Of a DNA stretch of 64,000 nt, positions 51,860-64,000 are shown in pieces. Within the stretch, counting starts at the first letter, position 1; every line of letters begins with the position of its first letter. Source of the DNA: Phallusia mammillata (Eukaryota). The stretch is taken from NCBI GenBank assembly GCA_965637545.1, contig OZ281500.1:6758001-6822000 (forward strand), in the 5' to 3' direction. The notes below the pieces were generated by a model. It did not search any database. It had not been told where the DNA came from and worked only from the letters and a program-made list of their open reading frames with translations. The position numbers were made by a program, and so were the translations under genes.

Positions 51860-52546
51860 TTAGTCTAGGGTTGTTTTCCCTCCCCAATAGCTGTATTTAC
51901 TGTTTATTGGAAGCTTTTGAAATCTAGGGGAACTCCGATAGGCTTTTATAGTGGGTAATGTCATAAAGTTGTTGTAGTAATCATGAATGTTTTGGGGACA
52001 ATCGTCGAGAAATCTTGGAAATAGTAATTTAATTTGGTCCAGAGCTTCACACAGTGCAAAGTCAACAAACATTAAATCTTTGCCAATCAACCATTTGTTT
52101 GTTCCTAAAAACAAGCCAAATCTTTGCAGGTCTTTCAGGAGCCGCAAATGAAATTGTTTTTTGTTGGCTTCAAAGTTTTCTGTTGTTGAATAGTATGTTA
52201 GAGATATAAATCGGTACCGAAAATCTTCAATGACCCCTTGCAGCATATCACAATTTATTTCCTGTTCTTCTGTGGTTGCTGTTAAAGTACTCTGTTTTCT
52301 TGCAATGTATCTCATTATTGCCCAACTTTCACTAAGCTTTATATCACCATCAATAAGGTAAGGCACATTTGGAAAGTCAAATCCAAGCGTTGCCTTATCA
52401 TGCTGCCACTCTTTACGTTCATAGGTTGGAGCATCCCCAGTAGGGTAGATTTTGTTTACATATTTTAACTCCAAATACTCAAACATGAGTCTAATTGGTT
52501 CACCAAGACATCTGATATCCCAGTAAGCCAAGATTGGCAAAGACAT
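51860..52546 (-). CDS. GSTM: Mu-class-like glutathione S-transferase 3, single coding exon
   Basis: MSLPILAYWDIRCLGEPIR, mu-loop, FPNVPYLIDGDIKLSES, WLIGKDLMFVDF. A splice acceptor lies 5 nt before the ATG. Confidence 0.93.
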   Translation of the reverse strand: MSLPILAYWDIRCLGEPIRLMFEYLELKYVNKIYPTGDAPTYERKEWQHDKATLGFDFPNVPYLIDGDIKLSESWAIMRYIARKQSTLTATTEEQEINCDMLQGVIEDFRYRFISLTYYSTTENFEANKKQFHLRLLKDLQRFGLFLGTNKWLIGKDLMFVDFALCEALDQIKLLFPRFLDDCPQNIHDYYNNFMTLPTIKAYRSSPRFQKLPINSKYSYWGGKTTLD

Positions 52547-53734
52547 TGTACCTGGTGAGTTTAATAAGCCTAACAAACAAAGGTTGGGTGTCAGGTACAA
52601 ACTACATTGTGTAACCAAAGCTGAAATTCACTTATCTGCCATAAATGCCATGCATATCTTTAACACACCTAAAGCAGAAGATTAAAACAAGTGCAAACAG
52701 TTCGAAAACAAACCGCAGTTCACTGATAACTGACGCCTTTCTTTGCATCGTTGGACATGGAACATTTGCTTCATCATTGCGTCAACACATTAGACCGGTT
52801 TGTTTGCTAGTGCCTCGTGACGTAAAAAAAATTGGCGCGCGAACTTCATTAATCCATAGAAATCATTTTGTTCTGTGTCGAAACCACATCCATGTCACTT
52901 AGGGATCAATCTTCTAATGAAAAAAACAAACATTTCCAAACAATGACAGCATGCCGCAAAAATTCACTTTCTAAATTAATATGCAAAGCAAAAGTTTTGG
53001 CGACTTCACTCGCAGTTTCAGCACCTATTTGAGCAGTTGTCTCCGCGCTAGCTCAAATTCTGCATTGAACTCAACAGCAATTTTCTAATAATGTTTTTAA
53101 CGTCAGATCCACACTATCAGGTAGCCTACAATCTATATTGTAAAAGCAATGCTGTTACCCTAACACATCTGTCATAAATATCATGTATATCAGTACAGAA
53201 ACTCATCTCAAAGCAGCAGACTAAGACAATTGAATACAGTTCGAAAATGAACAAAGTTTACTGCACACCGACGATGAAACGTTATTTCGGACTTGGAACC
53301 TTGCTTTATTAATGTGTCAACTCGTTCGTGCAGCCGGTTTGCTCGAACTCTTTGATGAAATATAGTTGATCAAACGCTACCTCACCCTGATTATTAAATT
53401 GTTTGATTTTTCGGCCTAATATTTTGATGAGAACACTTGCCCAAACAACAGCAGCAACAGCATATGCTGCGCTCACTACCGTATGTTAAAATGTAAAGCA
53501 AAATCGTTGGCGTTTCATTTTTTGCCGTCAAAGTGATATAGGCACACTGTTTTTACACATACAACCGTATCAATACTATTTTCCAGTTGCGGATTTAGAA
53601 CGGAGAAGTACTCATTTTTCCGTGCAAGCTCAAACACTGAATGAAGCAATTTTAAAATTAACGGCAATTTCACTCATGATCCATTTGACATTATGTCCAC
53701 ACTGTGTATGTTATTTTTTACAGTGTACATAATT

Positions 53735-56700
53735 TCAACATGTTGTTTCCAATAAACAGCTGATGAAAAAACGATGAAGGAATCGGTACTGTCTCTGTGT
53801 AAATGCGAAAACATTAATTACCCAGGTGCATTACTTCGTCGGTCGACATAAGAATGAACATCTACTTTAGGCTACAATATTATCGACGCAAGTTGTTGTT
53901 ATTACCAAAACACAATCTTGTTTACCAACTGGCAAAAGAGTACCCACCTTGCTTGACACCATCCCGGGGCGTACATCGCGTAAATCTTTAACAGTGCGAA
54001 ATATATCCACATTTCCCGTTCGGGATTGTGCTGTCTGTACTAGTTTCAGTGCTGCAAGGAATAGCCCGCACCTGTTTGACCCATCACTGAACAAAAATAA
54101 AATCGAAGTTTGGCCAATGTGTGTCCAAATAGAAACCCATGCGGCCAAGCATTTTGCAAGCCTGGGGTTCCGACGTAGAAGATATATGTTGCTTTGTATA
54201 AATAGAAGAACGAAGAGCTTTTGTAAAATGTATGAAAGAGCTTTTGTGATTGTGAGAAATAACTGTCATTACTAAAAATGTTGGTTTTATACCGCTTTGC
54301 AGGCGGTTGCCACCCGTTTTCAGCTAACTCCGAGCAAGTGCTTATTTTGCACTTCCCCAAAAGCATAAATACGTTTACAATACGGTTCGTGTGTTTTATG
54401 TTCTAATGCTTGGATAACAACGCCATGTCTGCCTCACTTGACAACAACAACAGTCCTAATCACATATTCAAGCATTTTAAAACATCAGGTTTTTAAGCAT
54501 TGTACATACAAATCAATCGAGTCTTCCATGGTGTAAGAGAGCCTAAAGGACCGATTTGCAATCTTAGTGCTGTTTACCTGCATTGAACTAACAATGTGCC
54601 TCCTCTGTTTGTGTGAATCCGCTGAACAGTTTGAATAAACTCCCAAAAAGATTCACAACTGCCAGGAACATTGTGCTCATTCCAGTTAATGAAATGCAAC
54701 TGTACAATGCTAGGCTTATCCTAAAAAAGCAAAAGAAAGTGCATATAAGTTGGTAACGACTTTGCAATCCCAGATAGAGCCCATTTTTTGAAGAAAGTTT
54801 TACCCTTCCAAGTGGATGTAAAACTTACACTTCCAATGTTAAACTTTCGTTGAACACAGCTTGGATTAACAGGAATTTGTTTGTTGAAACTGACAGATAA
54901 TTTCCCATATCTTGTTGTCTGGCCAGCACTTCTGGGCCAATAATCAGGAACACCCTGATAACAAACACACCAAAAATAGCATGAAGAAACCAAATGATTA
55001 AAATTTGATGTACTGTACATGCATACATGGTTCCTTTCCACATAACAAAACAATAAGATTTACGTCACATACAGAAACCAAACTCCAAAAATCCTCCACA
55101 ACTTCAGGATAAGGGTATTGTGCAACAATAACACTTCCACCTTCTTTAACATTCTAAAGCATATTTCCTGGTGTAAAATGCTATTAGCAAAGCTGCAACA
55201 AACTCAAACTCTACCTGAAAAAGCGAAGCATTGTAATAAAAAAGAGATTTTGGATGTTCTTGTGGCATTTGGAGTAGGTGTTTGTCATCTATAGAAAATA
55301 TTAATTGTACTGGTAAATTGCTCAACATTGATGGAAATTGCCCAGAGATAAAACTTACATGGCAAGACAGCATCAATACGGTTCTTTGATTTATTTTCAT
55401 CAAGTTGGGCCACTCCTTGCGAAGTGTGAATAGGTTTTATCAAGTCAAGTTTGTTAAACTCTGTTTCATAACCAGTAACTCCATTGCTTCTTTTTCTGTG
55501 ACACAAACATGTAAGAAATTCTTTTGCCAAATCTTGGGAGAAAAAGAGTTAAAACACAGATAGAAGCTTTGGAAAATAGTCATCAAATAAATTGTGAAAA
55601 CAACATACAATTGAAGCTCTTTCATTCTTGTAGCGATTTTGAGTTTTGGAAAATCTGTTTTTCCCAGACAATGAAATTCCACTAAAAGTTTGTGAAGAAA
55701 AATGTATTGCCTCTGACAAAATCAAAGTTTGAATTAAAATACCAAGACAAATAAAAGTCAAAATTATCAAGAGGCCTAAGCTATTCTTGTTAATAAGCTT
55801 CTAATGTGTCCGTAATTATGGTAACAGGTGGTCAAATTTATATTGTATTTTGTTAACATGTAGCTTAGAAGCAACAAACATAGTACCACATATGGTAAAA
55901 ATACTTTGTGTTTTGCTAACAAAATAATAGGTAAATCATCTCACAAAACTAAGTATCTTTTTTATTTTTTAATCCAAAATTTTGGAAATGCAGACCAAAG
56001 ATTTTTCATATTTTAATGTCCAACTAGATTACTTACTGCATTGGCAACCAATCCATATCTTTGCCTTCTGAGGAGTTTTACTGTTTCAGCCACATTCAAA
56101 TAGTTTGAATATTTTATAGAAGTAAGAAGAAAATCAAGGCACACAAACACACCAGACCTTCCACAACCATCACTAAAATATTGATTTAAGTGCTAACAAA
56201 CATGCTTATGAAATTATATTTACAGAATAAACACATGATAATGCATAAAAATTGAACCTGCAAATGACTGTTGTAGATGAATCAAACACAGTACGGTAAA
56301 CTTCAATGTATTTGCAGTAAAAAGCCAAAAAATCAGAAGTAGAATTGGGGCATTCTGGGCCTTGCCACCAATTGAAGTGGAGCATAGTAACAGCTTTGGT
56401 TACCTACATAAGAATAACAGTCACCTATCATCACAATTGAAAATACAACAGCTAAAACACAACACTTTTTGTGTACTTTGTCAACCAAAGCAAGTGTTGT
56501 AATATTGTACCATTTAGTTAAAAAGGGGTGTTGTTACTTACCGTTGGGTTCTCAACCATAGATAACTTCAAAATTCTGACAGAATAACTGGCATGGTCTG
56601 TTTCAGAAATGCATTCAACTGTAAGTTGTTGCAGTTGTTTAAATTCTCCATGCACAGGCCAGAACTTCATCTCAATACAAACACATAAAAATAGAATCAA

Positions 56701-59700
56701 TTTGTTGCATGACCAAAATATTTATTTAAAACATAAAATACCTTTCTATTTTCAAGCTCATCTGAAAGCAATACAACAACTTTACAATTAGAATTCCAAA
56801 TTGTATCCCAAAACTTTTCAACACATTGTTTGTCGATGTGGCTACAAACAAGGTATTCGTTCATCATTTTGTAACCCTAAAATTTAAGTAAATATGAAGC
56901 AAATAACAAATATTTCTTGTAAATGTCATTCCTAGATACTCAACTTTTACACTATCCTATCTTTTGGCAATCATTCTCATGCAAATATTTTAATACAGGC
57001 AAATTTGGTTAATCACATATTCAGTTTGCAAAACAGTCTAGGTTCAGTGCAATTGGCAAAGTGTATTTCATGAAAGATTGGCAATGGAAGCACTCCCTAC
57101 AACATGGCATACATACATTTCTTTCTCTGTTTTATAGTCACAAAGAGCTTTTGAGAAGTATGTTCTTAAAAAGGAGTTGAAAGATGTAAATCCAGAGAAT
57201 AAGCGTTCGCACTTATAATCTTATGCCACACTTTTTTAACCTGATTGTAATGAAAAATTTTTCTACAGAAATCAAGATTCTTGTTTGATTCTAATTTTTT
57301 TTAAATCTGTATGATTTTCTAAACACATAATAGTCTACAGTTTGGAATTCAAGATTAACATGCTAATCAATAGACTATGCTATGAGTTTGATTCATCGTT
57401 TGTTACAATTCCTAATGATCAACTTTGGTTGGATTCACTACATGCTACAACTTTGTATTTTTTAACAAAAGACAAGACACCACATATTGCAATTAACTGA
57501 CCAAAACTTACATCCACATAAGAAAGGTCTATGCTTTGCACTGGTTGGTTTGGTGTTCTTGACATCGGTACACTGGCATCTGATTTTTCAACAACATTAC
57601 CTGATTAAACCGTAAAATAAAATAAAAAAAACACTTTGCCTTACATTCAGCAATGCTAGAAATCTCTGAGCATTTTCTGGAAAACTGAGGTTCATTTTCA
57701 TCTAACTTCTGCACAAAACAAATTTTTATTAAACGGGGGTATTTTAAACACTTACAAGAACGTTACCTTAAACTGGCGATACAATTTATTAAAATTGTTA
57801 TTGGTCATCTCATAATAGTAAGGCAATAAATTTGCCACAGAAACTTTTGTGGAATTCAGATTTTGTGGCATTTTGGAAATAGAGCTCATCTTTATAGTTT
57901 CTAAAATAAAGAACAATTGTTAATGAACATTTGCAATAAATAGGTATAAAATGCCATGTTACCTTTTTGGTCACAAGTATCATTGGTAGGTTTGGACCTG
58001 CTACAAGTATATAATATCATTATTTATTTTTAAAAAACAATAATTTGCAAAATGAATACTTTTTAAATGCATAGACAAAGATTCCCAAGAGCACAAAAAA
58101 TAGACAAGCTCCCAATACTATGACAGCAATCCATGCAGGGTCCAAAGCTACTTTCTGAGTTTCTAAAATCATAATTATTTTAAAGCACCTTTCTTTTTTT
58201 ACCTTAACCGATGAAAATCAAAGAAAACACACTTTTTTCACAACTTTCTCCATAGTATCCTTCTGGGCATTTGCACTCATGCAAAGATCCAATTGCAGAG
58301 CACAAAGTTCCATTTGGACAAGGACTGCTAGAACAGGGACCTAGTGAAATGTTGCATAAGTATAAACACACGAATTTATTTTTAATTACGAGGTTGTTAC
58401 CAAGACTGCAGTTTGTTCCTGTAAATCCTAGAGGACATGAACAATTGTACGACAAGCCATCTTCACTTGCAATACAAGTTTTCCCAGTTTTACAAGGGTT
58501 TGAGACTGTACAACCATCTGTAATGCATTTAAAATGTTAGTTTTTTTAAACAAGTGAAATCAAACTGGGTTTGCTTTAAAATTAATGAGATTTAAGAAAA
58601 CAACAATAACCTTTGATACAAATGAAGTTTCTTGACTTGTTCATTTCCATATCACTCCATTTTCCCAACAGGTTTGTAAAATTGTTGTTCCCACAAATAC
58701 TGTCAACTTTGTACATTTGAAGAGCAAACTGACTGCAATGCCCATTCGGGTTACTGCCAAACCAATTTCCATATGTTCCTGAGCAGTTGTTACTTAGACA
58801 TATTTCAGTGCCATCATTCCAAAGCCATGAACCAGTTAAATTGTCGCCACCAATCCAATAAATCATTTGCCAAGTGGCATTTTGACATGGAATCATAGGT
58901 CCAATATTAGTTAATAACTGATTGACAGACTGTTGAATAGTTTCATTTTTAATCATCAGCAATGTTGAATTCCGTTCAGTGCAGTAATGTTGGGCATCCT
59001 GGTAGTTCAACATTTTTTCATTGTAAAAGGAAAGCTCACTGCCCCCAAGGAATGATACTGTAAAGGCAATATGCATGTGCACTTTATAAACAGAGTTAAC
59101 TGTTGTCTTTGGCATTTTATAGCACATGAAAAAAAATTTGAGCTTGACAACAAATAAATTAAAACACAGTTACCAATATTGCAATTTGTTCCATATGTTC
59201 CATTTTTACACAAGCACTTGTGCCCATCACTACCATTTGATTGACAAGTTCCATCAAACAAACATGGTTCACTAGAGCATGGGTCTAAATAGAGTTTATT
59301 TTGTTAAATTCGGTACACAACATTATTAAGTTTTCAAGTCCTTAACCTGGTGTTATGTCTCCTCCAGAATAGTCAGGAACAATGCATGTGTAATTTCGAA
59401 AAGAGGGATTAAATATGCATTCTTCGTCACTTGTGCAAGTGTGATTTGTGCTACATGCATCTATTAGCAAAACAAGTCAGTTCATCAGCAATGTAAAACA
59501 TACCCATAAACTTCATATTTAGGTTATATTACTAAACGGATTGAAAAATGCATTTTAATGACCTGTAGTGCAGTTAATACCAAAATATCCATCAAGACAT
59601 AAACAGTTGTAGGAAAATCCATCTGCATGCTCGTTACAAAGTCCACCGTTTTGACATGGGTTGAAAATTTTGCACACATCTGAGAAAAAATTGACTAATA

Positions 59701-60788
59701 CTTTAAGGTAGCAAACCTAAATGCAATTAGCAGGACACTTGAAAAATATAGACCTATGGTCTAGCTTAGTGGTTCCCAACAAATTTCCCCCCTAATAATT
59801 CAAAACAATTTCATTTCTCCCCAACAGACTTCATAGTAGAAGCTAAACCAGTGGTTCCCTAGGGAGGAATTTTATGAGTTCAGGGGAGGAATTTCATAAA
59901 AACTGTAAAAAACGTACATTGGAAATATTACAGAACATTTTTGTATACACATAATTATATCCATTATAATTTAGACCCGGTTCACATTTGGAACCGGTTG
60001 TAAAGGATTCTGAAATGGACATCCCTAATTATAAGGTCTATTTCAAATTGCTATAATTTTTTATGTTATATTTGTTTTTCATCTTATGGGGAGGAATGAA
60101 TACTTCGAAAATGGGCAAAGGGAGGAATGTAACAAAAAAGGTTGGGAACCACTGAGCTAAACCATACAAAGTTTATTTAGTATTGGGCTAAATAAACTTT
60201 GTATCAACTTCACAAATTATATTTCCAGAGCTGAAGTGTCTATTGACAAACTACATGTACAATTTACAGCGTATTCCTTCCAGAAGTTTTACAATTCCTC
60301 CCGGTTAGAAACCACTGGTCCAGCTGTGTTTACCCACTCACGTTTTAAACATATAAAATTCATTTTCTTATCCAATGCTTCATCCTGCCACGTTCCAAGT
60401 AGATGACTGTAATTCGTTTTACTGCTACAAATGTCATTGACCATTAGTATGCTCAGTGCAGATTGGAAATCATTATTGGGATTTTGACCAAACCAATTTG
60501 AATACAAGTTGGTGCAGCTATTATTTGTACAAATTTCAGTTGAATCATCCCATGACCATGAGCCATTGGTGTTTGTGCCACCACTCCAATATGCCATATT
60601 CCATTTTGTATTTTGGCAAGTAATGTTTGGCTGAGTTTTGTTCAGCAAATCATCAATAACTCTTTGAATCTTTTCATTTTTTATTAACAATAATGTAGAA
60701 TTTAGTTCTTCACAGTATTGTTTGGCAGCAGAGTAATTGTACTTTGTATCATTGAAGAAATGCAATTCACTTCCACCAATAGATATTT
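53735..60788 (-). CDS. Receptor-type PTP-like protein: CTL-EGF3-CTL-EGF2-TM-PTP(D1)-PTP(D2); 5' signal exon not resolved
   Basis: In-frame GT-AG chain: CTL 60342-60788, three EGF/EGF-like exons (59174-59679), CTL 58611-59047, two EGF exons (58229-58518), TM exon 58060-58162 (WIAVIVLGACLFFVLLGIFVYAF), D1 (EKFWDTIW, KFWP, VICSDGCGRSG), D2 (KNRIDAVLP, VQCSDGSNRCG, QYRFLH), stop at 53735. Confidence 0.85.
59849..60154. mobile_element. hAT MITE in an intron of the lectin-PTP gene
   Basis: TIR CAGTGGTTCCC / GGGAACCACTG and a perfect 8-bp TSD AGCTAAAC (59841-59848, 60155-60162). Confidence 0.92.
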
Positions 60789-63409
60789 CTGCAAAAGAAA
60801 ATGTCATTTTCCAAATAAGATACACAACACAACTTTCACTGTACAAACAGTCTTACAATTTTGCACATTTAAGCCACAAATTCTGATCATGTTACCGCTA
60901 CAAGCATAAAACAACAAAAATACTAAAATTACTTTGCTTGTATGTGACTACAATGTTCCTTTTCAATTGGTTGGTCATCCAATTTAATTATATGTAGGCT
61001 AACGTAGGCCTACTGGTATACCAGTCTACCATTTCGCAACACACTTTCGTCTTTAAAGAAAAAAGTAACTTGTTCTCAGAGGACATGAAAAACTATACAA
61101 CTGTCCTCATTTTAAAATTCCCTGTGTTTAAGTTTGGGCATTTCAAAAACAGTAAAACTTTATTTTTGCTGCAACATTATGATAGGCCTATTTATTTCTA
61201 AGATTTGTCCTTATTTTCAAAGGTTATGTCTTAGAAAAGTTCATTGTCCTTATTTCTAAAAAATGTCCTTATTTTTGACTGTAGTCCTTATTTTGTCTTA
61301 TTTTCCACAATTACTATAGTCAAATCCCTGCTACAAGCAGAAGTGAACCTAGACCCGGCCCATTGTAAGATGCACTTAGTTTTTTGTACGAACAACGAGT
61401 TGCAGGAACAGATTGTTTGTGGCCAAAATATTGCAAATATTGTGTCATGGATCATATAAATGCAAAGATTTGTTCAAAAACGTTTGTTTCGTTTCGCATA
61501 ACAATTTCATTTTTTGGTTGTCCTTGTTTTTGGTTTCAAGTCGATGGCAACCCTGCCTATAATACACTACACAAAGTATAACTATAAACCATGTTCCACA
61601 CAACCTTTACACGCTTGAACCGAAAGCTTTGAATTTTTGCTTGCAGAAACTTTAGCGCGTTTTGTTCTCTCACATAGAAAACAAATGTATATAGAGGCAA
61701 AATACTCTTCACGACTTTTTGTAATTCATCAGCTGCCCAGCGGGTTATGGATAGCTACTGAACATAATAATTGTGACAGTTTTACTTTAAACCGTTTACA
61801 ATATTACTTTGGTATATGTACAAAATTATTTCATCACACCATACCCACCTACAAAATTAGCAGAAGTGCACAACCAAAAGGATAGAGATGTTGCCAACCA
61901 TATTAACGTTAAGAAACAAAGCCTTGTCATTTTTGGAAACAATCTCGTCCTGCAAGTTACCTGGGCTATTTATTACTGCCGTCGATGCATAAACGCAAAC
62001 ATAAAGTTAAACACGCAATGATTAACCAACCAGTCAACAAATCCGATCAATTGTGCAATGTTACAACAAATCCGTGTCACATTGTCTATGCATTATAAAC
62101 ATAGTCTATGGCATTATAAACAAACCCACGTCTTAATTGAAGACGTATTGACCTCCAAAATTAAAATCCGAGTCTGGTTGCTTGACGACTCGATCCATCG
62201 AGTCAAGCCGATGAGCCTAATTGGCAAAGAAACGAATCAGTTATCTTTAAACAACCGTACGTGGCATTGACACAAAACCAACAACAGTCCCAACAAACTG
62301 CAAACACAGGTAAAATTCACTGTGTTTAACGTTTTCGACAAATTCGCTCCTTTTGTCCCGAGAAAATCTCTATGACGGCTTTGTTTTACGGTTTGCAAAT
62401 AAATTGAGCAAAACAACACAAAAGCGACTTTCATATCAGCAATATAACTCTTGCGTGACATAATTGTGAAACGACATTGCCGCAAAAATCGATAGACAAA
62501 AACGTACCTGTACTCCTGTGGTCGCATATTGACTACGTTAAATTTAGTGTTTGTTTACCCATTTCTCACAGTGGCACAAAAGCAATTAAACAGTGAAAAT
62601 CAAGGCACTTTTTGGTCTCAAAACGGCTTGTAGGTTACATTTACGATTTTGACAAGGCAGTGCCGATAAAACGCATTGCTCGTTTTCCACACAACGTGAC
62701 TGGGCTATAGACAGAACCTCGACCATCAGCCCCCACCCCTAAGCTTATCCATATATGTAAGAAAAAACAACATAGGCCTATCCCGAAACGTGTAAAAAAC
62801 ATATCCCTTTCGCCAGAGGTCTCGTAAACCGCCTCTTAATTGAACAACCGTAGTTAGGTAACCCCTGTACCGTATTAAGACTTTCTTGCATGGGCAGTAT
62901 TTGTATTAAATAGGCAGTATTTTGTATTAAATAATTTGTATGTATAAATATATAGGCTTAAATTATATACAGTAACTTGCGTTGGCTAAAACGGGGCTCT
63001 TGCCCTTCGTACCTGCGCCCATGCCATCTTATATATTTGGAGGATAGATGACACAGCATGACTGCAAAATTTGTGTAGTATCAATTTATTGCAAATGCCT
63101 AAAGGTACATGAATTGTATGAAGTATTAAGAACCGCTTAAATCACCCAGTCGCTTAGGTATAAATGCATAATCACTGGTCTGAAACTGGTGTGTCTCCAC
63201 ATTTGTGATTTTTGCAGAGAACATTGATAAAATACAAAAAATATAAATCTAGCAAAACAGTGTAGAGAATTCTGAGCAAACATTTGAAGAATAGCACTGC
63301 ACAAAATGGGGCAAGAAATAGGTGAAAAATTTTAAGGTGAAAAGGGGAAAAACATTTTGTAGAGATTAATTTGTGAGAAATGACAAAAGTTGCATATGCA
63401 AGAAATGTT

Positions 63410-64000
63410 TCAAACAAAACCTATCAAACGAAAGACATAAACCCATTTTGCTTTGGTCAAGGCTGGATTTAGAACTGGCAATGTAATTTTAACACCACCA
63501 GGACTTATGGATTGCCATGTAAGCAGGGATGCACCTCCGACTAAATCAACAGAGGCAGAAGAAGTTGAAATTGGGGAACCCAACTCAAGAATGTTGGAAT
63601 CAGGCCATGAAAAACTGAAAGCATATACATGTTTTCCGTTCATGGTGTACCTGCAAACCAAAATGTATTTTAGGTTTGCACAAAGCTGGTTTTTATGCAG
63701 TTAGGTAAGTTAAATAAGTACCATAAAAGCCCCTCAAAAAAACAGCAGACATGTGGGGAATTACTTCAACCAAACCTGGTTGTATCCAATGGGTTAAGCC
63801 AGTGTTTCTTAACCCTTTTTTCTGTATTATTTTTCTGTTTTTCTGTATAAGACTTCATTTTTTAGCAAAATTGTATCGCTTTTTAAGTTCAAATAAAAAT
63901 ACATCAGTTTTAGTTATAGCTATAAGATATATAAGACATTTTTTTCCTAAAAAAACAAATGTCTCCAGGAAAAGAAAAACTTACCAAACATCCTTATTTG
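63410..64000 (-). CDS. FUCA: Alpha-L-fucosidase (GH29), last two exons; gene begins beyond the window
   Basis: Exon 63985-64000 (NKDVW) splices to 63410-63650 (YTMNGKHVYAFSFSWPDSNILELGSP...KWVYVFRLIGFV*), matching the FUCA1/2 C-terminus. Confidence 0.85.

What the first reader, a model, noticed from the sequence alone, without database searches (positions are those of the whole stretch)
53735..60788. Receptor PTP-like protein with a C-type-lectin/EGF ectodomain
Seen: a single in-frame exon chain links two C-type-lectin domains and five EGF-like modules through one TM helix to tandem PTP domains. Known: classical receptor PTP ectodomains use FN3, Ig, MAM or carbonic-anhydrase domains, not CTL-EGF arrays. 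The lectin sugar-site motif is non-canonical (GQNPN, GSNPN rather than EPN/QPD) and both domains are rich in N-glycosylation sequons. All ectodomain exons are phase 1-1, consistent with exon shuffling. Inference: a lineage-specific recognition receptor for innate immunity, allorecognition, gamete recognition or adhesion.
Basis: partly seen in the sequence, partly recalled or inferred. Interest (0 to 1): 0.75.

Follow-up and report, generated by a model that had tools for sequence, protein, structure and literature searches.

The report
Sea-squirt lectin-EGF receptor pseudophosphatase
One sea-squirt gene does join two lectin-like and five EGF-like modules through a single membrane helix to a double tyrosine-phosphatase tail; it belongs to a sea-squirt-only receptor family that sits unnamed in databases, and this copy appears to have lost its enzyme activity.

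Summary
On the minus strand, 24 GT-AG exons (60788-53735) encode CTLD, three EGF, CTLD, two EGF, a TM helix and tandem PTP domains. Their translation matches the database protein A0A6F9DHR3 / CAB3262200.1 of Phallusia mammillata in 1045 of 1046 residues. That record probably comes from an embryonic transcriptome, so one mRNA spans the lectin and PTP parts.

The architecture is not unique. Ciona intestinalis, Styela clava and a second Phallusia protein carry CTLD-bearing tandem RPTPs. Their PTP tandems form one ascidian clade (100/100), and the window gene is sister to Ciona LOC100178651 (91/93). I found no paper describing the family. The scan noted related CTL-FN3 phosphatase genes on other pieces of this genome.

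New here: the membrane-proximal domain D1 is degenerate.
- KNRY is lost, WPD reads WQG, VHCSAG reads VICSDG, and QTxxQY reads ANARQY.
- It keeps 45% of near-invariant D1 positions, against 81-100% in 20 other RPTPs.
- Its branch is about four times that of the Ciona orthologue's D1.
- D2 is inactive-type, as across the clade.

The likely product is a double pseudophosphatase receptor, as in human PTPRU.

Both lectin domains have the CTLD fold but read NPN and WQD/WSD, not EPN and WND.

The start codon and signal peptide are unresolved. An immune or allorecognition role is untested.

The parts
60896..60947 (-). Candidate signal-peptide exon. It has a hydrophobic stretch (KVILVFLLFYACS) ending at a phase-1 GT donor, 107 nt upstream of the CTLD1 exon, but no in-frame ATG. 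The nearest ATG (60978) is one nucleotide out of frame and runs into TAG.
   Evidence: A related ascidian contig, L001, has an ATG-started, phase-1 mini-exon in the equivalent place. Unresolved.
60342..60788 (-). CTLD1 exon (447 nt, phase 1-1). Carries NPN instead of EPN, WQD instead of WND, and 8 N-glycosylation sequons.
   Evidence: Pfam Lectin_C 36.7 bits. AlphaFold2 pLDDT 81.6 and Foldseek probability 1.00 to NKR-P1B, Mincle, LOX-1 and langerin. Alignment A1. Sequons counted.
59563..59679 (-). EGF1 exon (117 nt, phase 1-1, six Cys).
   Evidence: Pfam EGF 29 bits. Exon table.
59347..59460 (-). EGF2 exon (114 nt, phase 1-1). A degenerate EGF-like module with four Cys and no Pfam hit.
   Evidence: Included in P0001.
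59174..59284 (-). EGF3 exon (111 nt, phase 1-1).
   Evidence: Pfam EGF 22.2 bits..
58611..59057 (-). CTLD2 exon (447 nt, phase 1-1). 51% identical to CTLD1; carries NPN, WSD and 7 sequons.
   Evidence: Pfam Lectin_C 33.4 bits..
58401..58517 (-). EGF4 exon (117 nt, phase 1-1).
   Evidence: Pfam EGF. Donor fixed by comparison with P0001.
58233..58340 (-). EGF5 exon (108 nt, phase 1-1).
   Evidence: Pfam EGF..
58060..58162 (-). Transmembrane exon (helix IAVIVLGACLFFVLLGIFV followed by basic residues).
   Evidence: Hydrophobicity 3.12 over 19 residues..
57767..58000 (-). Two juxtamembrane exons (58000-57963 and 57900-57767). They are separated from the TM exon and from each other by introns of 59 and 62 nt.
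55609..57708 (-). PTP domain D1, in seven exons: 57708-57645, 57579-57512, 56876-56742, 56670-56542, 56403-56258, 56172-56037 and 55712-55609. CX5R is kept (VICSDGCGRSG). KNRY is lost, WPD reads WQG, and the Q-loop reads ANARQY.
   Evidence: Pfam. PDB alignment to PTPRE. Motif tables. Conservation count 27/60. Domain tree.
53735..55495 (-). PTP domain D2, in seven exons: 55495-55359, 55288-55215, 55153-55019, 54954-54829, 54720-54578, 54086-53948 and 53794-53735 (which includes the stop). Motifs read KNRI, WNE, VQCSDGSNRCG and SSKRQY.
62391..62435 (-). It ends at a phase-0 GT and could join only through the 60947 exon, not directly to CTLD1.
   Evidence: No support found.

Best explanation
This is one Phallusia mammillata gene for a type I receptor-like protein tyrosine phosphatase. 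It belongs to an ascidian-specific clade of RPTPs that carry C-type-lectin-like domains, and it is the orthologue of Ciona intestinalis LOC100178651.

Ectodomain (shown). It consists of two tandem CTLD-EGF cassettes (CTLD-EGF-EGF-EGF, then CTLD-EGF-EGF), is heavily glycosylated by sequon count, and was built from symmetrical phase 1-1 exons.

Ligand binding (inferred). The CTLDs keep the fold but not the canonical Ca2+/sugar ligands, reading NPN with WQD or WSD. The ligand is therefore unlikely to be bound in the classical mannose/galactose mode. It may be a non-canonical glycan or a protein.

Cytoplasmic part (motifs shown, consequence inferred). Both PTP domains keep the Cys-X5-Arg loop. D1 has lost the pTyr-recognition loop, the WPD aspartate, the Q-loop glutamine and the His before the Cys. 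D2 is of the inactive type found across the whole clade. The receptor most likely signals without turnover, as a double pseudophosphatase. It would bind or sequester phosphoproteins, or partner with active paralogues, as proposed for human PTPRU.
For: One gene.
- 24 GT-AG exons keep an open frame.
- Introns between the TM exon and D1 are only 59, 62, 58 and 65 nt, which leaves no room for a second promoter.
- The translation equals P0001 (CAB3262200.1 / A0A6F9DHR3, Phallusia mammillata) in 1045/1046 residues.
- PMC7237864 describes a de novo embryonic P. mammillata transcriptome whose peptides were named after the best Ciona hit and sent to ENA. This fits the P0001 record.

Family.
- CTLD+PTP proteins occur in Ciona (P0009/P0195, P0011/P0146, P0145/P0147), Styela (P0200, P0211, P0218, P0219) and Phallusia (P0297).
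- The ascidian clade has support 100/100, and the window protein is sister to Ciona LOC100178651 at 91/93 or SH-aLRT 97.

Degenerate D1.
- Motif tables.
- Only 27 of 60 near-invariant D1 columns are kept, against 81-100% in 20 other D1 domains.
- The D1 branch is 2.37 against 0.55 for the Ciona orthologue, while D2 is 1.23 against 0.91.
- Pfam Y_phosphatase scores 311 bits, against 403-481 in the nine Ciona, Styela and Phallusia CTLD-RPTPs scanned.

CTLD.
- Pfam, model and Foldseek.
- NPN aligns to EPN in Ciona relatives, and is conserved in a related species at 50% identity.

Precedent. PTPRU is a double pseudophosphatase that binds substrates of its paralogues (PMC7320164).
Against: - No enzyme assay exists, and Cys and Arg of the P-loop are intact in both domains, so residual or altered activity cannot be excluded.
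- No start codon or signal peptide could be defined. P0001 itself starts at an internal Met inside CTLD1, so the transcript may be 5'-incomplete, or this allele may carry a frameshift in the signal exon.
- The link between P0001 and the transcriptome paper is inferred from naming and date. No tool showed it.
- The window protein sits on a long branch, so its exact orthology is less certain than the support values suggest.
Confidence: 0.7

Rival explanations
1. It is a catalytically active receptor PTP. The substitutions in D1 are tolerated or compensated, for example by the Glu two residues after the WQG, and the receptor dephosphorylates substrates on ligand binding like classical RPTPs.
For: CX5R is intact in D1 and D2. 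The ORF has been kept open over a long branch. The Ciona orthologue has a fully canonical D1.
Against: Four separate catalytic elements are altered at once: KNRY, the WPD Asp, the Q-loop Gln and the His-Cys with Ala-to-Asp change. Conservation at near-invariant positions is 45%. D1 evolved about four times faster than its orthologue's D1, whereas D2 did not. From my own knowledge, Asp and Gln substitutions at these positions in PTP1B are used to make substrate traps.
Confidence: 0.13
2. It is a transcribed gene on its way to becoming a pseudogene. The start codon or signal peptide is lost, so no receptor reaches the membrane, and the degenerate D1 reflects relaxed constraint.
For: No in-frame ATG precedes the hydrophobic leader. 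The nearest ATG is one nucleotide out of frame and hits TAG. P0001 begins at an internal Met within CTLD1. D1 has a long branch.
Against: About 1110 codons across 24 exons are open with all splice sites intact, despite some 2 substitutions per site on this branch. CTLD core residues, EGF cysteines, the TM helix and CX5R are kept. The NPN loop is conserved in a related species at 50% identity. The apparent frameshift may be an assembly or haplotype indel, or the true first exon may lie elsewhere.
Confidence: 0.12
3. Two adjacent genes: a lectin-EGF membrane protein and a separate cytoplasmic tandem PTP.
Against: Introns of 59-65 nt link the TM exon to D1, and phases match at every junction. P0001 spans both parts. 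Ciona and Styela homologues have the same fused architecture.
Confidence: 0.02

Closest known systems
Ciona intestinalis LOC100178651 (XP_078481791.1, and the 1555-aa isoform X2, P0195); uncharacterised RefSeq models
   Same: Signal peptide, CTLD and EGF modules, TM helix and tandem PTP. It is sister to the window protein in the tree, and the domain-wise trees agree for D1 and D2. P0001 was itself named after this locus.
   Different: Ciona has three CTLDs and about ten EGF modules. Its D1 is canonical: KNRY, WPDHGVP, VHCSAGVGRSG, QTSSQY. Identity over the PTP tandem is only about 33%.
Other ascidian CTLD-bearing RPTPs: Ciona 'epsilon-like' (P0011, P0146), Ciona LOC100183702 (P0145/P0147), Styela clava P0200/P0211/P0218/P0219, Phallusia A0A6F9DQN0 (P0297), and the CTL-FN3 phosphatase/tail arrays noted elsewhere in this genome
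   Same: They fall in the same ascidian PTP clade (100/100), have a CTLD in the ectodomain, and have an inactive-type D2 with CxDG.
   Different: Companion domains differ (Ig, FN3, more CTLDs). Most keep a canonical D1. Only Ciona P0146 is partly degenerate, reading KNRN and WGE, at 81%.
Human PTPRU (R2B), the double pseudophosphatase RPTP (PMC7320164)
   Same: A tandem RPTP in which D1 as well as D2 lacks activity while keeping the catalytic Cys. It is proposed to act by binding the substrates of active paralogues.
   Different: It has a MAM-Ig-FN3 ectodomain and belongs to a different PTP subtype. Inactivity there comes from structural rearrangements with the motifs largely present. Here the motifs themselves are replaced. 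This is an independent origin.
Vertebrate R4 RPTPs (PTPRE, PTPRA)
   Same: Best solved-structure matches of the PTP tandem: 2jjd at 2.4e-67 and 6uzt at 9.9e-60. RefSeq calls one Ciona paralogue 'epsilon-like'.
   Different: R4 ectodomains are short and lack folded modules. The tree does not join the ascidian clade to PTPRE, so membership is not shown.
Selectins
   Same: An N-terminal CTLD is followed directly by an EGF module on a type I membrane protein. P-selectin and L-selectin are weak sequence hits.
   Different: There are no sushi/CCP repeats, no EPN/WND Ca2+ site, the cassette is duplicated, and the tail is a phosphatase-type tandem rather than a short one.

Membership tests
Tandem-domain receptor-type PTP | A single transmembrane helix between the ectodomain and the PTP domains | tested here: met
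   One 19-residue window with hydropathy 3.12 (P0001 435-453; exon 58162-58060), followed by basic residues.
Tandem-domain receptor-type PTP | Two Y_phosphatase (PF00102) domains in tandem, each with CX5R | tested here: met
   Pfam 311 bits in two stretches. Collinear alignment to PTPRE D1-D2. VICSDGCGRSG and VQCSDGSNRCG.
Tandem-domain receptor-type PTP | N-terminal signal peptide | tested here: inconclusive
   A hydrophobic leader exon with the right phase exists but has no in-frame ATG. P0001 starts inside CTLD1.
Catalytically competent classical PTP domain (D1) | KNRY phosphotyrosine-recognition loop | tested here: not met
   The KNRY columns read SEIS or IAE(Y), depending on the alignment, and the DYINA columns read SIDLS.
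Catalytically competent classical PTP domain (D1) | WPD-loop aspartate (general acid) | tested here: not met
   WQGPECP aligns to WPDFGVP/WPDHGVP.
Catalytically competent classical PTP domain (D1) | Q-loop glutamine (QTxxQY), and His before the catalytic Cys | tested here: not met
   ANARQY and VICSDG. Only 27/60 near-invariant columns are kept.
Catalytically competent classical PTP domain (D1) | Measured phosphatase activity | not testable with these tools
   Needs recombinant protein and a pNPP or phosphopeptide assay.
Ca2+-dependent carbohydrate-recognition CTLD | CTLD fold | tested here: met
   Pfam Lectin_C above cut-off for both domains. AF2 model pLDDT 81.6, with Foldseek probability 1.00 and target-normalised TM mostly 0.7-0.8 among the top matches, which are solved CTLDs.
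Ca2+-dependent carbohydrate-recognition CTLD | EPN or QPD motif together with WND | tested here: not met
   NPN with WQD (CTLD1) and NPN with WSD (CTLD2). The canonical C2-C3 disulfide positions are not both Cys, and extra Cys are shared with P0004/P0005.
Ascidian CTLD-bearing RPTP clade | The PTP tandem groups with ascidian RPTPs, and the ectodomain has a CTLD | tested here: met
   A clade of 13 ascidian proteins at 100/100. The window protein is sister to Ciona LOC100178651 at 91/93. D1 and D2 each fall in the ascidian D1 and D2 clades (97*).
R4 subtype (PTPRA/PTPRE) | Short unstructured glycosylated ectodomain; PTP domains group with PTPRA/E | tested here: not met
   The ectodomain has seven folded modules. 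The tree leaves the ascidian clade apart from PTPRE, although PTPRE is the best PDB hit.
Selectin | CTLD-EGF followed by sushi repeats; EPN Ca2+ site | tested here: not met
   No Sushi hit in any exon. The motif is NPN, not EPN.

The most novel reading that the evidence does not exclude
Ascidians evolved their own subtype of receptor phosphatase that reads the outside world through C-type-lectin domains. Within it, this Phallusia member has become a non-catalytic 'dead' receptor. It would work as a decoy or scaffold opposite its active paralogues, giving a lectin-based paired recognition system for glycans or self/non-self cues, convergent with vertebrate lectin-type paired receptors and with PTPRU.
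Probability: 0.15. Interest if true: 0.65.

Novelty: new variant of a known kind. Interest (0 to 1): 0.42.

Why it matters
Receptor PTPs are classified by ectodomain, and the textbook subtypes contain no lectin type. Ascidians, the closest invertebrate relatives of vertebrates, turn out to have a whole clade of CTLD-bearing tandem RPTPs that nobody seems to have described.

This member adds a second, independent example of an RPTP with two pseudophosphatase domains. Its Ciona orthologue still has a canonical D1. That gives a natural active/inactive pair for asking what a dead receptor phosphatase does.

The practical value is modest. The protein record already exists, and no biological role has been tested.

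Tried and rejected
1. A PTP-like stretch in the 635-nt intron (57300-57169) looked like a relic or alternative pTyr-loop exon. 138 of 500 shuffles scored as well, and it lacks usable splice sites. Rejected.

2. D1 as a duplicated D2. The D1 P-loop exon matched D2 of PTPRS/LAR better than their D1. The domain tree nevertheless places it inside the ascidian D1 clade. Rejected.

3. Its donor is phase 0, so it is incompatible with the phase-1 acceptor at 60788.

4. My first splice choices (CTL2 donor 58620, EGF4 donor 58407, D1b acceptor 57600) were corrected against P0001.

5. A whole-protein homology search with P0001 was swamped by EGF-repeat proteins and gave no relatives.

6. The WPD-loop exon alone found nothing in the PDB.

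7. The Ciona locus could not be fetched for synteny.

8. Rfam found nothing in 52600-63500.

9. Ten paper searches found no description of a CTLD-EGF RPTP or of the locus names. The only near precedent is a table line listing fish PTP-GMC1 (PTPRQ) among CTLD-containing proteins (PMC514892).

11. I sent no self-joined spliced model to any search tool. Exons were searched by reference, and whole-protein searches used the database protein P0001.
Full report
**What is there.** The window has about 37% G+C and no N. On the minus strand between 60852 and 53735, stop-free stretches give Pfam Lectin_C twice (36.7 and 33.4 bits; cut-off 22.6). They give EGF in four modules and Y_phosphatase pieces in seven stretches. 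Reading the three frames and checking splice sites gave a chain of 24 exons, all AG..GT, that stays in frame to a stop at 53738-53736.

A search of 1.84 billion representative proteins with the CTLD1 exon, given by reference, returned P0001 (1046 aa). tblastn shows it to be 98-100% identical exon by exon. After correcting three of my splice choices against it, the model equals P0001 in 1045 of 1046 residues. I did not send my own joined model to any search tool. Whole-protein searches used P0001.

**Whose gene.** P0001 is CAB3262200.1 / UniProt A0A6F9DHR3, 'uncharacterized protein LOC100178651 [Phallusia mammillata]'. The window is therefore P. mammillata, which agrees with earlier notes calling this genome a sea squirt. 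PMC7237864 reports a de novo transcriptome of P. mammillata from eggs to larvae. It kept the longest peptide per transcript, named peptides after the best Ciona hit, and deposited them at ENA. That matches the style and date of this record, so P0001 is most likely RNA-derived. This link is my inference. If it is right, one mRNA spans CTLD1 to the end of D2.

Independently, the introns from the TM exon into D1 are only 59, 62, 58 and 65 nt. This rules out a second transcription unit. The gene is bounded by the last exon of an alpha-L-fucosidase (63661-63410) and by an intronless GST gene (52618-51860), both on the same strand.

**Ectodomain.** The order is CTLD1, EGF1, EGF2, EGF3, CTLD2, EGF4, EGF5, all on phase 1-1 exons of 447, 117, 114, 111, 447, 117 and 108 nt. 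EGF2 has four cysteines and no Pfam hit. The two CTLDs are 51% identical, so the ectodomain is a duplicated CTLD-EGF cassette.

An AlphaFold2 model of CTLD1 has pLDDT 81.6 and pTM 0.79. It matches solved CTLDs of both the sugar-binding kind (Mincle, langerin, SRCL) and the protein-binding kind (NKR-P1B, LOX-1), with Foldseek probability 1.00.

In alignment A1 the window's GQNPN and GSNPN align with EPN of several Ciona relatives, and the WND position reads WQD or WSD. The canonical second disulfide is missing. Four extra cysteines are shared with short proteins from other assemblies (P0004, P0005). A genomic contig from run DRR090687 (L001) carries an orthologous CTLD exon at 50% identity that also reads NPN, so this loop is under constraint. 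There are 8 and 7 sequons in the two CTLDs.

**Cytoplasmic part.** The PTP tandem of P0001 aligns collinearly with PTPRE (2jjd, 2.4e-67), then with PTPRA, PTPRS and LAR. Both domains keep CX5R. The D1 motifs, by alignment with 12 ascidian and 8 other RPTPs, read as follows:

| Element | Canonical | Window D1 |
|---|---|---|
| pTyr-recognition loop | KNRY | unrecognisable |
| Following motif | DYINA | SIDLS |
| General-acid loop | WPD | WQG |
| P-loop | VHCSAG | VICSDG |
| Q-loop | QTxxQY | ANARQY |

Further measures of D1 degeneracy:
- At the 60 D1 columns conserved in at least 90% of the other 20 sequences, the window D1 keeps 27 (45%). Every other sequence keeps 81-100%.
- In a tree of separate domains, the window D1 lies within the ascidian D1 clade (97*), so it is a true D1.
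- Its branch is 2.37, against 0.55 for the Ciona orthologue's D1. The D2 branches are 1.23 and 0.91.
- Pfam's Y_phosphatase score is 311 bits, against 403-481 in the nine Ciona, Styela and Phallusia CTLD-RPTPs scanned.

D2 reads KNRI, WNE, CSDGSNR and SSKRQY. The CxDG P-loop and the loss of the WPD aspartate are common to D2 of the whole ascidian clade.

**Family.** CTLD plus tandem PTP is found in:
- Ciona LOC100178651 (P0009, P0195);
- Ciona 'epsilon-like' models (P0011, P0146);
- Ciona LOC100183702 (P0145, P0147);
- four Styela clava proteins (P0200, P0211, P0218, P0219);
- a second Phallusia protein (P0297).

Companion domains are EGF, Ig or FN3. No non-tunicate protein in the lists carried Lectin_C. 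These lists are samples, not a census.

A careful ML tree of the PTP tandem puts 13 ascidian proteins in one clade (100/100), apart from the LAR type and from PTPRE/PTPRC. The window protein is sister to Ciona LOC100178651 (91/93), with branch lengths 2.12 and 0.90 (the quick tree agrees). The Ciona orthologue has a signal peptide directly before its first CTLD and a fully canonical D1.

Two earlier notes of this scan describe CTL-FN3 ectodomains coupled to a tandem phosphatase or to a short tail on other pieces of this genome. That is a related branch of the family, not this gene.

**How it probably works.** Shown: a type I membrane protein with a lectin-EGF ectodomain and two PTP-fold domains lacking catalytic residues. 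Inferred: it does not turn over phosphotyrosine. It would signal by binding, either by trapping phosphoproteins through the intact P-loop or by scaffolding and competing with active paralogues. This is what was shown for human PTPRU, described as the only human RPTP with two pseudophosphatase domains (PMC7320164). From my own knowledge, replacing the WPD Asp and the Q-loop Gln is how PTP1B substrate traps are made. Loss of KNRY, however, may weaken pTyr binding. The ligand of the CTLDs is unknown, and the non-canonical site argues against classical mannose- or galactose-type binding.

**Open problem.** The 5' end is unresolved. A hydrophobic mini-exon (60947-60896) ends at a phase-1 GT donor 107 nt upstream of the CTLD1 exon, which is the right place and phase. 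Its frame has no ATG, and the ATG at 60978 is 83 nt from the donor, one nucleotide out of phase, and runs into TAG. In L001 an ATG-started 73-nt phase-1 mini-exon lies 127 nt upstream of the orthologous exon. P0001 starts at the first in-frame Met inside CTLD1, as expected if its transcript also lacked an upstream in-frame ATG or was 5'-incomplete. The possible causes are an assembly or haplotype indel, another first exon, or recent loss of the start.

**Literature.** Ten full-text searches found no paper on a CTLD-EGF RPTP or on the locus names. The only hint of a CTLD on any PTP is a table line for fish PTP-GMC1 in PMC514892.

**Verdict.** The gene is a real member of an ascidian-specific, undescribed RPTP variant that is already present in databases. 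This member is likely a double pseudophosphatase.

Noticed in passing
window 51860-52618 (-): An intronless ORF with GST_N and GST_C_3 domains (mu-class-like glutathione S-transferase) lies immediately downstream of the RPTP gene on the same strand. The likely Met is MSLPILAYW, a little inside the listed TTG start.
   Followed up: partly
window 63410-63661 (-): The last exon of an alpha-L-fucosidase (Fucosidase_C, 64 bits) bounds the RPTP gene upstream. The 5' end of the RPTP gene must therefore lie between 63409 and 60789.
   Followed up: partly
window 57579-57600 (-): Two in-frame CAG acceptors lie 21 nt apart at the start of the second D1 exon. P0001 uses 57579. Using 57600 would add seven residues (NVVEKSD) in the degenerate pTyr-loop region, so alternative splicing is possible.
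   Followed up: no
L001:531-1179 (Logan run DRR090687): A genomic contig of a related ascidian (organism not given) carries an orthologous CTLD exon at 50% identity, with the same acceptor position and phase, an NPN motif, and an ATG-started phase-1 mini-exon upstream.
   Followed up: partly
P0011 versus P0146 (Ciona intestinalis 'receptor-type tyrosine-protein phosphatase epsilon-like' isoforms X4 and X1): These are labelled as isoforms of one gene. Their PTP domains differ throughout (for example KNRF/WPD against KNRN/WGE in D1), and they do not group together in the tree. They look like different loci or cassette exons.
   Followed up: no
P0142 (Ciona savignyi, 592 aa): Its D2 is sister to its own D1 (99*) and carries a canonical WPDHGVP. 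This points to a recent internal duplication, gene conversion or a faulty gene model, and it is unlike all other ascidian D2 domains.
   Followed up: no
window 60342-60788 and 58611-59057 (-): Both CTLDs lack the canonical second disulfide. They share four extra cysteines (positions 57, 86, 91 and 120/121 of the exon), which are also seen in P0004/P0005 but not in the Ciona relatives. This is a derived CTLD subtype in the Phallusia lineage.
   Followed up: partly
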